From NCBI RefSeq assembly GCF_006345805.1, contig NC_043010.1, positions 28,024,001 to 28,088,000 on the forward strand: a stretch of 64,000 nt of DNA, read 5' to 3'. The notes beneath the pieces were generated by a model that worked only from the letters and a program-made list of their open reading frames with translations, made no database searches and was not told the DNA's origin. Position 1 is the stretch's first letter. Each line of letters opens with the position of its first letter. Position numbers and translations under genes: made by a program. The DNA is from Octopus sinensis. Taxonomy: Eukaryota. This document shows, piece by piece, positions 4,608 through 39,258 of this stretch.

Positions 4608-4727
4608 AATACTTTTGATTTTGGCTTCGCAGACCCCTTCCTGATCAACGGAAACTCTTGTCTGAGGATTAAGAATTTTATGTATCCACTTCATCATCTG
4701 TTCTTTGAAATCCGACTGCCAAACATC
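4608..4727 (-). CDS. TIR gene exon 14 (DVWQSDFKEQMMKWIHKILNPQTRVSVDQEGVCEAKIKSI); gene continues beyond the window
   Basis: ttcctttgttccag| acceptor, |gtgagt donor, 120 nt, phase 0/0. Confidence 0.85.
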
Positions 4728-5981
4728 CTGGAACAAAGGAAAACGTAAAATGACGTGCAGTAAACCAAGAAGGTGTCTATGCTCTCTTTTCTTCTAGTTT
4801 TTGTCTGCGCCATCTCACAAGAAGCTAAAAAGAGGAACAAGGTTTGGTCAGTCAAGGAAAACAAAGCAAAATCAACCACATTAATCGCAAATGTCTTTCA
4901 GAAACTGAGAAAGCCATGGCAACAGCAACTTTCCTTCTAACATAACAAATAATAATATTTGGAGATATGTGAATGTGTGTGTGTATGAGAGAGGGAAGGG
5001 GAGGGGCACATGGCCTAGAGGTTGGGATGGTGCACTCACGATCTAGCGAACATTGTTTCAATTCCTAGACTGGGTGAGGTGGGGGTGCATTGTGTTCTTG
5101 AGCAAAACACTTCATCTCACATTGCTCTGTGATCATTTCGACACCTGACGCACGTTGCACCATGAACCAGAGTCAGGCAACATTGATTTGATGGCAGAGA
5201 GCGAGCTAAGGTGCACCACTTGCATTTGATAAATGTAAACAAATCATTTGTGCCAGTCGTTCGGCAAAAGCTGAACGCTCATACATCATCTTCGATGGGA
5301 GAGTCCATCATGGGTGTACGTGTGTGTGTGTGTGTGTGTATATCTCCCTCCCGTCGCTGACACGCAACGAGAGGGCCACTACTGCCTTTCTGACTCTGCT
5401 TCCACCAAGTGTAGACGGCTTCCTCTGTCTCTCTCGACGTTCTCAAAGCGTTCAAAATATCTTTTCATTCGTTCAGGCTTAACAGCCCTTAATATTTGTG
5501 TTACTGTTATTCTCCTTGTCCTGTCTTTTACTGTTTTTATCTATATTGTTTTTACTGTCCTGTTTGTGTTACCATTTTTACCCCTCCAAAACAAAAGAAC
5601 CCACATTTTATTTAATTTGCTTTGCGGGAAGGACTATTTCAATGAAGTCGTGTCTCGCCTTTACCTTCAAAACGCGGAGTAGATGAAACAGAGGCGGCTG
5701 AAGAAGGGGAATTTTCCTTGTGTTGTATGTCTTGTACTCTATTTTTTCGTTGTTTAAGAAAAATGTCCATTTCCTTGGTTTTGTTTTTATGTTTTCGTTT
5801 CTCATTGCGTTCGATGTTGTTTTGGTGTCCTGTACCCATATATGCATGTATATATATACATATAGATGTAGGTACGTACATATATGTATGTATATATGCA
5901 TATGTTTTATTTACTATTTTGTTATTATATGATGGAATGCCATGCATCCATTTCTATATATATATATAAAATGATAAACGT

Positions 5982-6255
5982 TGCCCTTTTCAAGCCTAGC
6001 CAGGCTCATGGGCCCGGTTTCCCGGTTTCTGTGACGTATGTGTTCCCCCCAGCTGGACGGGACACCAGTCCATCGCAGTGTTACTCAAGAAACAGGAAGA
6101 GAGAGTGAGAGAAAGTTTAGGCAAAAGAGTACAACAGGGGTCGCCACCACCCCTTGCCAGAGCCTCGTGGAGGTTTTAGGTGTTTTCACTCAATAAACAC
6201 ACACAACGCCCGGTCTGGGAATTGAAACCGCGATCCTACAACCACGAGTCTGCAG
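5982..6255 (-). mobile_element. tRNA-derived SINE (same family as 27135-27438)
   Basis: Reverse complement matches the 27135 copy (cgttgtgtgtgtttattgag.gaaaacacctaaaa.ctccac). Confidence 0.75.
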
Positions 6256-6728
6256 CTATACATCATCATTGTTTAACATCCGCTTTTCCATGCTTGTATG
6301 GGTTGGATGGAATTTGCTGAGGCAAATTTTCCACAGTTGGATGCCTTTCCTGTCACCAACCTTCACCTGTTTCCATGTAAGATAATACTTCCCCACTGAA
6401 CAGATGTTTCCACAGAAGATTGGAAAGGAACAACACTGCTTGTATGACAGTGAAACTTGTTTACTACAATCATGCAATGTCAAATAAGGAGGCAGTAACA
6501 CACAGGCACACATGACGACAGGCTTCTTTCAATTTTCATCGATCAAATCCACTCACAAGGCTTGGTCAGCCTGGAGCTATAGTGGAAGACACTTGCCCAG
6601 GATGCCACGCAGTGGAATTGAACTGAAGCCCATGTGGTTGGGAAGCAACCTCTTACCACACAGCCATTACCTGTACCCGCAGAAGCGCATAGAAATAAAA
6701 CCATGAAAGAAGAAGTGTAAATACTTAC

Positions 6729-6830
6729 CCTGAAAGGTAACATCCCAATAAGCATACACATCCAGGAAGGCATTTCAAAATTCTCATATTTCAGGGCAAG
6801 CATCCATTTACGATTTTCACAGTAGAATGC
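6729..6830 (-). CDS. TIR gene exon 13 (AFYCENRKWMLALKYENFEMPSWMCMLIGMLPFR), end of TIR2
   Basis: poly-T acag| acceptor, agg|gtaagt donor, 102 nt, phase 0/0. Confidence 0.9.
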
Positions 6831-36489: not shown

Positions 36490-36955
36490 TCATCCACATT
36501 TCACTTTGACCCACACACTTGACAAACACTCCAATGCACTTTTTTACCAACACAATCTGACCAACACTTACACTCTTTTTGTGCTAGCTTGCTGCATTCA
36601 CTTAAGAAATGGTTAACATTATTATCTTCTTTTCCACAGATTCTGTGTTTGTTCTCTGACTTAGTTTTGTCAATTCTTGTTTTTATCAGAGTCATCTTAA
36701 TGGCTTCTTTCTGAGCAGCTATAATTAGTGACTCAGTTTCTTGCTTAATGTTTCCATGCATCAGTCACGGCTAGTATTCTTTACTTCCAGCATCCTCAGG
36801 TTGTTGCATGAATTGGCCATGTAAACCCTTCTCTTTTCAACTATTTGTCTTGACATTCTTTCTGTTCTTAAATTTGCCAACTGTTTTAGTGACCTTCTGG
36901 ATATTTCTGACCACAGATAGTATCCTTTCTTCAACATAGCTTTTCAAATCCAACA
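36490..36955 (-). mobile_element. Decayed non-LTR retrotransposon fragment of RLE type (R4/R2-superfamily C-terminus with degenerate CCHC knuckle)
   Basis: GNIKQETESLIIAAQ.EAI....IKTRIDKT.SE...RICGKED..VNHFLSECSKLAQ. Confidence 0.8.
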
Positions 36956-38273
36956 TTGAAGTTATCATTAAGGCAGATTCGTTAGCACACCAGGCAAAAT
37001 GCTTAGCAGTATTTCTTCTGGATTTATGCCAGAACTGACTTTGCCTTTCATCTTTTCAGGGTTGATAAAGTGAGTATCATTTGGACATTGGGGTTGATAT
37101 AATCAGCTAATTTCCCAAATTTCAGATTTTCTGCCAATAGTAGAAATGATTATTATTATTATTATTATTATTATTATCATCATTGTTGTTGTTATTGTTA
37201 AGGTGGCAAGTTGGCAGAATTGAGAGCACATTGGAAAAAGTGCTTAGAGCCATTTCTTCCAGATTTTACATTCTGAGTTCAAATTCCACCAAGGTCAACT
37301 CTGCCTTTCAGGATCAATAAAAAAAAAGAAGTACTAGCCCAGCACTGGGATCGATATAATCAACTTCCCCTCCCCTCAAAAACTGCTGGCCCTGTGCCAA
37401 AATTTGAAACCATTATTATTATTGATAAAGCAGAGCACTAGCAGAATCGTTGGCATGTGGGACAAAACTGTTTCAATGCTTAGCAGCATTTTGTCTGTCT
37501 TTACATTCCAAGTTCAAATTTTGTCAAGGTTGACTTTGCCTTTCAACTCTTTCAGGGTTGGTCAATTAAATACCAGTGGAATATTGGGATCAATCTAATT
37601 GACCAGCTCTCTCCCACAAAATTCCAGGCCTTTGTGCCAATAGTACAAAAGATTATTATTATTATTATTATCATTATTATTATTATTGAGTGAGAGAGCA
37701 GTGCATGCCATCAAAGTGACACTGGGGTACAATTATATGAAGCCCGGTATACCCATCATGTCTACACATCTGATATGGGTACAACAGACACATGCATCAC
37801 AACCATATGTGCACGACATAGTGATCTCATATCAAGATAAACAGTGCATGACCTTGCAGGTGGGGCCCAGTTAGAATTTTCTTCTGGTCAAGTAGCCCAT
37901 CGTGTTCAAAAGGTCCCTGAATAAGGGTTGTTTAAGGATGTTGAACAAAACCCACATGTTTCCAAAGATGAATTATCCAAACCGCAAAGAATTCCTCTCA
38001 ACACATGGCTATGATGCTTCCCCACTGCTTCTGCTCATGATCAGAGATGCACATATCATCAGCCACTAAAGGACATGCTCAGCTGGTTACAGTCAAACAA
38101 CTGACAAGCTAATCTGGTATAGAGCAGAATATTTGCTGTGGCCCATCTTTTATACCAAGACAAAACAATGTACATGATAACACTTCCAATCAGCTAAGAT
38201 CAGAAGCCATGAGAGCCACTGCCTGGCACTGCATCAGGGTATATATTTTATTATTACTATTATTATTATTATA

Positions 38274-38660
38274 GGCATAGGAGTGGCTGTGTGGTAAGTA
38301 GCTTGCTTACCAACTACATGATTCCAGGTTCATTCCCACTGCATGGCACCTTGGGCAAGTGTCTTCTACTACAGCCTCAGGCCAACCAAAGCCTTGTGAG
38401 TGGATTTGGTAGACGGAAACTGAAAGAAGCCCGTCGTATATATGTATATGTGTGTGTGTTTGTACATCTGTGTTTGTTCCCACACCTTCGCTTGACAACT
38501 GATGCTGGTGAGTTTACGTCCCCGTAACTTAGCGGTTCAGCAAAAGAGACCAATAGAATAAGTACTAGGCTTACAAAGAATAAGTCCTGGGGTCGATTTG
38601 CTCGACTAAAGGTGGTGCTCCAGCATGGCCACAGTCAAATGAAACAAGTAAAGAGAGAGT
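38274..38660 (+). mobile_element. Abundant tRNA-derived SINE, full length; other near-full copies at 43454-43856, 48131-48492, 49156-49550 (+) and 59298-59660 (-)
   Basis: ggagtggctgtgtggtaag (A box), caggttcattccca (B box), ggcaccttgggcaagtgtctt, internal (TA/TG)n, ctccagcatggccacagtcaaatga tail. Confidence 0.88.
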
Positions 38661-39203
38661 ATTATTATTATTATTCATGAGGGAGCTATATTGCTTAGCC
38701 TCTGAATACTTAAGCTTAAGCCTTTAGCATTTAATCCGGCCATATTTGATCCAAAAGATTCTCCCTGTTTTATGTTCAAACTGACTAGATCCAGCCTTTC
38801 ACACCTACCCAACAGTGTCGTTCTAAGAATAAACACTCACATTATTGAAATCTTGAAGCTATGAGATAATGTATAATTAATTCAAAACAATGTGAATAAA
38901 TATGCATTACACTTGACAGAGGAATCTTAATGCTAAAGGGTCAAGCTGACTTATGATCAAACACATTCCAGATATGACCATCCCGGCATTCTTAGTCTAG
39001 ATCTACATTATCCAATAGGCCCTTCCTACAGAATATGATTGAGATTTGACTGCTATTTCTAGCATATCAAGCAGCCACACAACAGTTGCAATGTAAGCTT
39101 GTGAGCGCTTGTATATTTGAGAGTGTGACCGAGTCAATCTGATTTGTGTTGCATAACCCATAACTCAGCAACATGCGCAAATGTGTGTGATGGGTACATG
39201 TAC

Positions 39204-39258
39204 CTGAAACTTGTCGAACTTGTTTTCCAATGTTGATCCAACAAACACAGCCACACAT
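39204..39258 (-). CDS. TIR gene putative first coding exon (MCGCVCWINIGKQVRQVS)
   Basis: cag|gtacat donor in phase 1, matching exon 2; in-frame TGA 6 codons upstream of the ATG, so the start is uncertain. Confidence 0.55.

What the first reader, a model, noticed from the sequence alone, without database searches (positions are those of the whole stretch)
4608..39258. Hidden 14-exon gene encoding a Ubl-Ubl-TIR-TIR protein: a non-TLR, non-SARM1 animal TIR immune candidate
Seen: 14 minus-strand exons with canonical GT-AG sites join in phase into a 586-aa ORF with no stop (55+193+89+107+194+169+126+127+152+120+91+113+102+120 = 1758 nt). The ORF track shows only fragments. Known: the first TIR (ILISYVRAE..SVFLDVDEIKTG..W..RE..GKFMLPI..EWP) resembles SARM1 and bacterial TIR_2 domains, which act as NAD+ hydrolases or make signalling nucleotides. 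Inference: with no LRR, transmembrane, Death, ARM or SAM region in the assembled part, this is not a TLR, MyD88 or SARM1 but a separate cytosolic TIR enzyme architecture.
Basis: partly seen in the sequence, partly recalled or inferred. Interest (0 to 1): 0.9.

Follow-up and report, generated by a model that had tools for sequence, protein, structure and literature searches.

The report
Octopus di-Ubl–TIR–TIR–SLOG gene, already annotated

Summary
The 14-exon chain exists as described. Exons 2-14 are real. Together with a different first exon (63713-63734) and one further exon (1040-1131), they translate to 605 aa that are 100% identical to Octopus sinensis XP_036364649.1, LOC115219292. The model also stops 254 aa short: four more exons lie outside the window.

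The gene is therefore not hidden. It is annotated as an uncharacterised "TIR domain-containing protein".

The architecture is tandem ISG15-like Ubl, then TIR1, then TIR2, then a C-terminal SLOG domain.
- TIR1 is SARM1/ThsB-like. Its catalytic Glu (WSNRE, E300) is kept in 115 of 116 homologues.
- TIR2 is divergent and has no Glu at the catalytic position (Gln501 by spacing).
- The SLOG Gly-rich motifs are degenerate in cephalopods.

The family is close to single-copy and runs from sponges to echinoderms. A 2026 preprint showed that TIR1 of the Patiria orthologue, 67% identical to the octopus TIR1, makes cADPR.

Verdict: a correct gene find and a largely correct domain reading, but incomplete. 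It is a new member of a recently catalogued family, and an immune role is unproven.

The parts
63713..63734 (-). Coding exon 1 of RefSeq isoform X3 (MSAGISK + first base of W). Isoform X4 uses the inner donor, giving 63725-63734.
   Evidence: ATG at 63734, GT donor, phase 1; joined to 36386 it gives MSAGISKWTHRTG, identical to XP_036364649.1.
60520..60586 (-). Alternative first coding exon (isoform X1, MESNSGLKMSCNRPHGQWIYTCG)
   Evidence: exact match to P0128; donor GTAAAT.
46628..46685 (-). Alternative first coding exon (isoform X2, MDVMLNVYLKEYGTLSSTTG)
   Evidence: exact match to P0129; donor GTAATC.
39204..39258 (-). Unsupported and probably not an exon.
   Evidence: in phase and with a GT donor, but its peptide is in none of the 290 proteins retrieved, including all annotated isoforms.
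36194..36386 (-). Exon 2: first Ubl (beta-grasp) domain, N-terminal part
   Evidence: AF2 strands and helix at residues 14-68.
30416..30504 (-). Exon 3: end of Ubl1 (GWPV...QE motif, invariant E80)
29260..29366 (-). Exon 4: start of Ubl2
27809..28002 (-). Exon 5: rest of Ubl2 (NGWPV...QE, invariant E161) and start of the disordered linker
23321..23489 (-). Exon 6: linker and TIR1 betaA-alphaA (ILISYVRAE)
20696..20821 (-). Exon 7: TIR1 core, including the catalytic Glu in WSNRE (E300 of the 840-aa protein)
   Evidence: Glu kept in 115 of 116 homologues; it aligns with E327 of the assayed Patiria TIR.
17698..17824 (-). Exon 8: C-terminal part of TIR1 (GKFMLPINFLSEWPPSCLAIQ)
15680..15831 (-). Exon 9: inter-TIR linker (helix 365-383 with low-confidence flanks)
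12945..13064 (-). Exon 10: start of TIR2 (KLIVITLHQEQ)
11225..11315 (-). Exon 11: TIR2 (NWLEKEGLEVWLS)
9910..10022 (-). Exon 12: TIR2 betaC-alphaC (IIFVLSDSYATSRTCMQQ). Gln501 sits where TIR1 has its Glu.
   Evidence: Hurieva Table S3 lists GLN for TIR2 of the Lottia orthologue.
6729..6830 (-). Exon 13: TIR2 (invariant E506, R508, K509)
4608..4727 (-). Exon 14: end of TIR2 and helical linker.
1040..1131 (-).
   Evidence: The remaining four coding exons lie outside the window at C14:28023435-611, 28021622-780, 28018115-237 and 27994604-891.

Best explanation
The interval is the larger part of one protein-coding gene on the minus strand: LOC115219292 of Octopus sinensis/vulgaris, orthologue of O. 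bimaculoides LOC106872313. The gene has about 19 coding exons and spans about 93 kb. It starts near 63734 and runs off the low end of the window.

It encodes an 840-aa soluble protein with five parts:
- a tandem pair of ubiquitin-like beta-grasp domains arranged like ISG15;
- a disordered linker;
- TIR1, a catalytically competent TIR of the SARM1 / bacterial ThsB type, with its glutamate in the motif W-S/T-N-R-E;
- TIR2, a divergent TIR with no glutamate at the catalytic position (Gln501 by spacing);
- a C-terminal SLOG (LOG/ThsA-like Rossmannoid) domain.

Most likely mechanism: TIR1 cleaves NAD+ and cyclises the ADP-ribose to cADPR, as measured for the starfish orthologue's TIR1.

The roles of the other domains are inference:
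- TIR2 is a non-catalytic partner that positions or gates TIR1. TIR active sites normally form across TIR-TIR interfaces.
- In most phyla the SLOG domain is a nucleotide (ADPR/cADPR-type) sensor or processor acting in cis. In cephalopods its three Gly-rich loops and conserved Glu are lost, so this control is probably altered or gone in octopus.
- The di-Ubl head is a recognition or adaptor module.

Whether the output serves immunity or housekeeping Ca2+/NAD signalling is open.
For: Gene and exons:
- 605 of 605 residues are identical to XP_036364649.1.
- The remaining exons were found in the same contig of the window's own genome.
- A transcript-sized Logan contig from a related cephalopod is collinear with the exons.
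- 141 full-length homologues were found.

Domains:
- Pfam TIR_2 scores 71.7 bits with two matched stretches. TIR2 alone scores 26.1 bits.
- The Lottia and Patiria orthologues pass the Pfam LDcluster4 (SLOG) cut-off and weakly hit STALD / ThsA models.
- The AF2 model has mean pLDDT 78.8, and above 90 in most 10-residue blocks of the folded domains.
- Foldseek hits ISG15 (E 2e-5, about 175 columns), SARM1 TIR (TM 0.68-0.75) and ThsA (8btp, 7uxt).

Catalysis:
- W296 and N298 are kept in all 116 homologues, and E300 in 115 of 116.
- The octopus TIR1 is 67% identical, without gaps, to the Patiria A0A914B4U3 construct.
- That construct is listed as active and cADPR-producing, with catalytic residue 327, in Table S4 #129 of bioRxiv 10.64898/2026.04.20.719644. 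Its identity as the orthologue was confirmed.
- TIR1 also matches the PADLOC ThsB1 model (3e-11) and the NCBIfam Thoeris type III ThcB4 model (1e-15).

TIR2 non-catalytic:
- Gln is found at position 501 in 106 of 116 homologues.
- The preprint lists GLN for Lottia V3ZZ45_2 and HIS for Macrostomum.
- The TIR1 and TIR2 profiles are related at E 5e-5.

SLOG decay: all motifs are intact in 71 of 116 homologues, and lost in cephalopods, scallops and oysters.
Against: - No enzymatic or expression data exist for the octopus protein itself.
- The Patiria activity was measured on an isolated TIR over-expressed in E. coli for 4 h.
- The octopus SLOG region hits no Pfam model. Its fold assignment rests on the AF2 model, on loose multi-domain Foldseek alignments (rmsd above 20 A) and on homology to orthologues.
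- hhalign places the TIR1 Glu opposite the residue after Gln501. An invariant Glu506 lies five residues downstream, so a shifted catalytic residue in TIR2 is not excluded.
- The roles proposed for TIR2, SLOG and the di-Ubl are inference only.
Confidence: 0.75

Rival explanations
1. [quoted passage not shown] Under this view the activity seen in E. coli has no role in vivo.
For: - TIR2 weakly resembles the adaptor-type TIRs of MyD88 and TLR2.
- The adaptor/regulator hypothesis for ecTIR-DC proteins is quoted in PMC6321704.
- No separate effector domain is present.
Against: - The catalytic Glu and the surrounding W-T-N-R-E motif are almost invariant from sponges to octopus. That is hard to explain without catalysis.
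- The orthologue makes cADPR in a Glu-dependent way.
Confidence: 0.12
2. The protein is a SARM1-like executioner. Once activated, it depletes cellular NAD+ to kill or silence the cell, rather than making a signalling molecule.
For: - SARM1 TIR is the closest solved relative by sequence and by fold.
- In bacteria, ThsA-type SLOG domains switch on NAD+ depletion (PMC9503650).
Against: - In Table S4 the Patiria entry is marked only for cADPR, with no further column filled (column headings).
- The preprint states that most of the tested TIRs did not deplete NAD+.
- No ARM or SAM regulatory or oligomerisation domains are present.
Confidence: 0.15
3. The gene is exactly: a previously unseen, complete Ubl-Ubl-TIR-TIR gene of 14 exons starting at 39258.
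For: The chain is open and its splice signals are canonical.
Against: - Exon 1 is unsupported.
- 254 further residues, including the SLOG domain, are encoded downstream.
- The gene is already annotated in RefSeq and UniProt.
Confidence: 0.02

Closest known systems
Patiria miniata LOC119739902 (UniProt A0A914B4U3), the echinoderm TIR/SLOG protein assayed by Hurieva et al. 2026 (bioRxiv 10.64898/2026.04.20.719644)
   Same: A full-length collinear orthologue (E 1.9e-97) with the same di-Ubl, TIR1, TIR2 and SLOG order. TIR1 is 67% identical, including the catalytic Glu.
   Different: The starfish SLOG passes the Pfam LDcluster4 cut-off and keeps the GG...G...E, EGGPGAAHE and TGGxAGG motifs. The octopus copy has SSGCYGASQ, EGSSDVSYI and a deletion at these positions.
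SARM1 (human) / TIR-1 (C. elegans)
   Same: The TIR fold and the position of the catalytic Glu. SARM1 is the best solved match to TIR1. It is also a cytosolic, NAD+-cleaving enzyme that produces cADPR.
   Different: No ARM autoinhibitory domain and no SAM octamerisation domains. This protein instead has a di-Ubl head, a second pseudo-catalytic TIR and a SLOG tail.
Bacterial Thoeris (ThsB TIR plus ThsA SIR2-SLOG)
   Same: TIR1 hits the ThsB1 and Thoeris type III ThcB4 models. The SLOG of the orthologues hits ThsA STALD models, and the AF2 model hits ThsA structures. The logic of a TIR making a cyclic ADPR next to a SLOG that binds such molecules is shared.
   Different: Here both domains sit in one chain. 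No SIR2, Macro or transmembrane effector is attached. All scores are far below the equivalog cut-offs. The orthologue's product is canonical cADPR, not the 1''-3' gcADPR (3'cADPR) of type I Thoeris.
ISG15 (tandem ubiquitin-like modifier)
   Same: Two consecutive beta-grasp domains. Foldseek gives probability 1.0 and E about 2e-5 over about 175 columns.
   Different: There is no sequence-level relationship and no free C-terminal LRLRGG, so it cannot be a conjugated modifier. It carries its own conserved GWP[VI]...QE motif.

Membership tests
TIR domain superfamily (Pfam TIR_2, PF13676) | Profile match above the curated cut-off | tested here: met
TIR2 alone scores 26.1 bits, just under the cut-off.
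TIR domain superfamily | Flavodoxin-like alpha/beta fold that superposes on solved TIR domains | tested here: met
   AF2 model against SARM1 TIR: TM 0.68-0.75, rmsd 3.3-4.0 A. RUN1, RPS4, BtpA and SPARTA TIRs are also hit.
Catalytic (NAD+-cleaving) TIRs | Conserved glutamate on helix alphaC in the active-site position | tested here: met
   TIR1: E300 in WSNRE, kept in 115 of 116 homologues, aligned to the assayed E327 of Patiria. TIR2: not met; Gln501 by spacing, or the adjacent residue by hhalign.
Catalytic (NAD+-cleaving) TIRs | Measured Glu-dependent NAD+ turnover or cADPR-isomer production | not testable with these tools
   Reported only for the starfish orthologue's TIR1 (Table S4 #129 of the preprint).
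SARM1 | ARM repeats and two SAM domains N-terminal to the TIR | tested here: not met
The N-terminus is a di-Ubl.
Toll-like receptors / IL-1R | LRR or Ig ectodomain, one transmembrane helix and a C-terminal TIR | tested here: not met
   No LRR or Ig hits. The highest 19-residue Kyte-Doolittle mean is 1.25, below the usual 1.6 threshold for a transmembrane helix.
MyD88-type adaptors | Death domain plus a non-catalytic TIR | tested here: not met
   No Death domain hit. TIR1 keeps the catalytic Glu.
Animal di-Ubl-TIR-TIR-SLOG family (orthologues of LOC115219292) | Full-length collinear homology with the same domain order | tested here: met
   141 hits. Lottia, Priapulus, Patiria and sponge proteins score E 1e-107 to 1e-78 over 87-96% of the query.
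SLOG superfamily (Pfam LDcluster4 PF18306 / STALD PF18185) | Profile match and Gly-rich nucleotide-binding loops (GGxxG..E, GGxGxxxE) | tested here: not met
   The octopus and Argonauta C-termini hit no Pfam family at E <= 5, and their motifs are degenerate. The Lottia and Patiria orthologues do pass (32.5 and 27.7 bits against 26.3). Octopus keeps the homologous region: 32-33% identity over about 197 aa, with pLDDT above 90 in most blocks.
SLOG superfamily | Rossmannoid fold that superposes on ThsA/LOG structures | tested here: inconclusive
   Foldseek hits BcThsA 8btp (E 1.5e-4) and SeThsA 7uxt (E 4e-4), but as long multi-domain alignments with rmsd above 20 A. The domain-only single-sequence model failed (pLDDT 34).
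Thoeris defence system | A TIR signal generator coupled to a SLOG/Macro sensor fused to an effector (SIR2 or transmembrane) | tested here: not met
   TIR and SLOG parts are present at domain level. No effector domain is present, and all scores are far below the equivalog cut-offs (57 against 220 bits).
ISG15 / ubiquitin-like modifiers | Tandem beta-grasp fold | tested here: met
   Foldseek hits several ISG15 structures with probability 1.0 and E 2e-5 to 6e-4.
ISG15 / ubiquitin-like modifiers | Exposed C-terminal Gly-Gly for conjugation, and sequence-profile membership | tested here: not met
   The domains are N-terminal and internal. The profile finds no ubiquitin-like chain in the PDB. The only Pfam hit is weak: Ubiq_DUF_assoc, 16 bits against 24.3.

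The most novel reading that the evidence does not exclude
The family is an ancient animal (sponge-to-deuterostome) counterpart of Thoeris fused into one chain. A di-Ubl sensing head controls a TIR1/TIR2 pseudo-dimer that makes cADPR. In most phyla a ThsA-like SLOG domain reads or trims that nucleotide in cis. Cephalopods, scallops and oysters have independently lost the SLOG pocket while keeping the enzyme. The same di-Ubl head is fused to an NB-ARC-like P-loop region in Entamoeba and to dynamin- and septin-like GTPases in unidentified metagenomic organisms. That would mark it as a shared input module of eukaryotic innate-immune-type proteins.
Probability: 0.2. Interest if true: 0.7.

Novelty: new member of a known kind. 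Interest (0 to 1): 0.35.

Why it matters
Catalytic TIR signalling is established in bacteria and plants and is only now being tested in animals. This gene belongs to one of the few animal TIR families that pairs a catalytically intact TIR with a SLOG domain, the pairing that defines bacterial Thoeris. It is almost single-copy and is conserved from sponges to echinoderms.

The octopus copy adds no new kind of system.
- the N-terminal head folds like ISG15;
- TIR2 lacks the catalytic Glu across the family;
- the SLOG nucleotide-binding motifs have decayed repeatedly in molluscs while TIR1 stays 61-73% identical across phyla.

"Hidden" and "complete" were wrong.

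Tried and rejected
- **Exon chaining by length, GT-AG and open frame only.** This gave more than 50 solutions, so it could not identify the model alone. I fixed the homology-supported exons first.
- **First homologue search with TIR1 alone (140 aa).** It returned only exon-sized fragments from metagenomic eukaryote contigs, because of the length filter.
- **Single-sequence AlphaFold of the octopus SLOG region.** pLDDT was 34, which is unusable. I should have supplied an alignment.
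- **Word-based search with the di-Ubl region.** It found only Octopus and Argonauta. The exhaustive profile search was needed.
- **Profile of the di-Ubl against PDB sequences.** Nothing meaningful; a roadblock/LC7 chain at E 0.05 was rejected as chance.
- **Burroughs et al. 2015 (the paper that defined SLOG).** Not held in the library. Whether it already noted animal TIR-SLOG fusions could not be checked. The ecTIR-DC class number of this family in Gerdol et al. 2017 could not be checked either.
- **Paralogue search in the window's own genome.** Only the gene's own exons matched.
- **Considered and rejected:** TLR, MyD88 and SARM1 membership (see the membership tests), and a pseudogene (all 15 window exons are open and identical to RefSeq).

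Full report
**What is in the sequence**

The window is AT-rich, repeat-laden eukaryotic DNA. It lies at C14:28024001-28088000 of a 2.72-Gb assembly with 13,516 contigs.

It has 14 exons, 1758 nt and a 586-aa open frame containing ILISYVRAE, SVFLDVDEIKTG, WSNRE and GKFMLPINFLSEWP. Every internal acceptor has a polypyrimidine tract and AG, and every donor begins GT, GTAAGT/GTAAA-like at most junctions.

The open frame alone proves little. More than 50 other stop-free chains of the same lengths exist in the interval.

**Is the gene real, and is it hidden?**

A search with the 586-aa model returned 141 full-length homologues. The best is Octopus bimaculoides XP_014774740.1 (LOC106872313, UniProt A0A0L8H900, 840 aa) at 99% identity. 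Its 90% cluster also holds the O. sinensis/vulgaris LOC115219292 isoforms.

The 15 window exons then translate to 605 residues with no mismatch to O. sinensis XP_036364649.1, and three mismatches to the O. bimaculoides protein. The window is therefore O. sinensis or O. vulgaris.

Findings on the gene model:
- The last 235 residues are encoded by four exons just outside the window, at C14:28023435-611, 28021622-780, 28018115-237 and 27994604-891.
- In total the gene has about 19 coding exons over about 93 kb.

Independent support for the splicing comes from a related cephalopod. A 3,178-nt Logan contig (SRR29271486) carries an uninterrupted 829-aa ORF. Its residues run consecutively across the predicted junctions when aligned to the window.

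The gene appears to be single-copy in this genome. It is not hidden: it is annotated, though only as "uncharacterized / TIR domain-containing protein".

**Domain architecture**

*TIR domains.* Pfam gives TIR_2 at 71.7 bits (cut-off 28) with two matched stretches. TIR2 alone scores 26.1 bits, E 1.3e-5. Its family profile is related to the TIR1 profile at E 5e-5.

*SLOG domain.* The Lottia and Patiria orthologues pass the Pfam cut-off for LDcluster4 (SLOG cluster 4) in the C-terminal region. They also weakly hit STALD and the PADLOC ThsA models.

*Predicted structure.* An AlphaFold2 model of the 840-aa O. bimaculoides orthologue, built on a 64-sequence alignment, has mean pLDDT 78.8, and above 90 in most 10-residue blocks of the folded domains. 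Foldseek against the PDB gave three kinds of hit:
- ISG15 structures over about 175 columns (E 2e-5, probability 1.0) for residues 12-180;
- SARM1 TIR domains (TM 0.68-0.75, rmsd 3.3-4.0 A);
- ThsA from Thoeris (8btp, 7uxt; E 1.5e-4 to 4e-4), as loose multi-domain alignments.

*What is absent.* No LRR, Death, ARM or SAM family is hit by Pfam, and no stretch reaches transmembrane-level hydrophobicity.

The architecture is therefore di-Ubl, TIR1, TIR2, SLOG.

**Catalytic potential**

In an alignment of 116 family members, W296 and N298 are invariant and E300 is kept in 115. TIR1 is by far the most conserved domain: 61-73% identity between octopus and sponge, priapulid, limpet or starfish, against 26-46% for the other domains.

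TIR1's closest solved relatives by sequence are SARM1 TIRs. It also matches bacterial ThsB1 (3e-11) and Thoeris type III ThcB4 (1e-15) at domain level.

At the equivalent spacing TIR2 has Gln501, which is Gln in 106 of 116 homologues. hhalign shifts the register by one residue, but neither register gives Glu. An invariant Glu506 lies five residues further on and is unexplained.

**What the literature already says**

Hurieva et al. (bioRxiv 10.64898/2026.04.20.719644, April 2026) surveyed about 16,000 eukaryotic TIR domains and assayed 154 of them.
- Their tables list members of this family with TIR_1 = GLU, TIR_2 = GLN or HIS, and a SLOG domain. Examples are Lottia V3ZZ45, Macrostomum A0A267GNU3 and two tardigrade proteins. 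V3ZZ45 is my hit P0010.
- Table S4 entry 129 is Patiria miniata A0A914B4U3, residues 254-417, catalytic residue 327. It is marked active and producing cADPR after 4 h.
- That protein sits in the same 90% cluster as my hit P0032. The assayed construct is 67% identical to octopus TIR1 without gaps, with E327 aligned to E300.
- The paper states that activity in all such cases was abolished by mutating the Glu, and that most tested TIRs did not deplete NAD+.

The family's TIR1 activity is therefore already shown in one orthologue. The octopus protein itself, TIR2, the SLOG domain and the di-Ubl are uncharacterised.

1. *The SLOG pocket is degenerate in cephalopods.* The family consensus motifs are VTGGFYGVGE, IEGGPGAAHEAEE and CTGGAAGG. 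Octopus has VSSGCYGASQ, FEGSSDVSYITQQ and a deletion (CYRN) at these positions. Argonauta and the third cephalopod are similar. Of the 116 homologues, 71 keep all motifs. Scallops and oysters have lost them, apparently independently, and heterobranch snails partly, while TIR1's Glu stays. This explains why the octopus C-terminus hits no Pfam model. It suggests that SLOG-mediated control is dispensable in these lineages.

2. *The di-Ubl head is a distinct sequence family.* It has a conserved GWP[VI]...QE motif in each half and no sequence relative in the PDB. An exhaustive profile search found 241 cluster representatives. Most are this family or fragments of it. A few carry the module in other contexts:
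   - with a weak NB-ARC / P-loop match in Entamoeba dispar EDI_147640;
   - with RCC1 repeats in Spongospora subterranea;
   - with dynamin-like or septin-like GTPase domains in unnamed metagenomic or Logan proteins.

   This points to a portable input or adaptor module, but that reading is inference.

**Mechanism**

- Shown here: the gene structure, the domain order, conservation of the catalytic Glu, and orthology to the assayed starfish protein.
- Shown by others, for the orthologue only: Glu-dependent cADPR formation.
- Inferred: octopus TIR1 does the same. TIR2 is a non-catalytic partner in a TIR-TIR interface. SLOG is an in-cis nucleotide sensor or processor that octopus has largely lost. 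The di-Ubl is a recognition head.

Pure-adaptor and SARM1-like NAD+-depletion readings remain possible but are less likely.

An immune role is not established. Near single-copy 1:1 orthology (only two species contributed two distinct proteins among the named hits) and extreme TIR1 conservation fit a conserved signalling enzyme at least as well as a fast-evolving defence gene.

**Distribution**

The named hits come from molluscs, annelids, nemerteans, a priapulid, chelicerates, echinoderms, hemichordates and homoscleromorph sponges. The preprint adds flatworms and tardigrades. No vertebrate, insect, nematode or cnidarian name appears among the 120 hits listed, which is suggestive but not proof of absence.

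**Verdict**

The domain reading is right but incomplete. The claims of a hidden gene and an unknown architecture do not hold. This is a new, uncharacterised member of a family that has been catalogued and partly assayed. It carries some unexplored features: the ISG15-like head, the pseudo-catalytic TIR2 and lineage-specific SLOG decay.

Noticed in passing
window 2784-3815 (+): A 343-aa open frame matches Pfam RVT_1 (reverse transcriptase, 36.5 bits against 29.6). It sits in a GC-rich patch with strongly negative GC skew (2001-4000: GC 0.48, skew -0.33), inside the intron between exons 14 and 15. It is a retroelement fragment on the strand opposite to the gene.
   Followed up: partly
window 24467-24697 (-), 12396-12450 (-) and 36501-36764 (-): Short intronic ORFs look like 3' fragments of non-LTR retrotransposon ORF2: GRGRPRKTWDEVVKHDL...DRDLWR, with a second copy ...DNRDLWQYA, and a Cys-rich CGKED...H...C piece. 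Pfam gave no significant family.
   Followed up: partly
window, many sites, e.g. 7339-7519, 7888-8096, 8273-8530, 12134-12356, 13277-13465, 23998-24128, 24904-25089, 34095-34250: A SINE-like dispersed repeat recurs in both orientations throughout the introns. It is recognisable by the translated strings FLQLDALPNANHS and HASMGWT.
   Followed up: no
window 15234-15644, 17289-17657, 22418-22756, 52698-52908 and 53780-54243: Five tandem arrays lie in introns: a 20-bp unit x 20.6 copies, 181-bp x 2, 179-bp x 1.9, 16-bp x 13 and (AT)n x 234.
   Followed up: partly
window 63713-63734, 60520-60586 and 46628-46685 (-): There are three alternative first coding exons, plus an inner donor at 63725. All are phase 1 and all splice to 36386. 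They give four annotated N-termini that differ only in the first 4-23 residues, before the di-Ubl. The first intron is therefore 10-27 kb long.
   Followed up: yes
family alignment (SLOG region, residues 585-785 of the 840-aa protein; exon 1040-1131 and the four exons outside the window): The SLOG Gly-rich loops and conserved Glu are intact in 71 of 116 homologues. They are lost in cephalopods, pectinid scallops and oysters and eroded in heterobranch snails. The TIR1 catalytic Glu is kept in 115 of 116.
   Followed up: partly
proteins P0245 (Entamoeba dispar EDI_147640), P0236 (Spongospora subterranea), P0221 and P0267 (unnamed metagenome/Logan): The di-Ubl (GWPV...QE) module also occurs outside this family. 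It is joined to a weak NB-ARC / P-loop match, to RCC1 repeats, to a dynamin-like GTPase and to a septin-like GTPase (library-wide E 2e-8 to 1e-5).
   Followed up: partly
TIR2, residues 506-509 of the 840-aa protein (window exon 6729-6830): E506, R508 and K509 (motif YCEHRK) are invariant in the 64-sequence alignment, although TIR2 lacks the canonical catalytic Glu. Their role is unexplained.
   Followed up: no
hit P0007: The source name reads "LOC115219292 [Argonauta hians]". It re-uses the O. sinensis locus number for an Argonauta protein that is only 82% identical, which looks like a labelling oddity in the source record.
   Followed up: no
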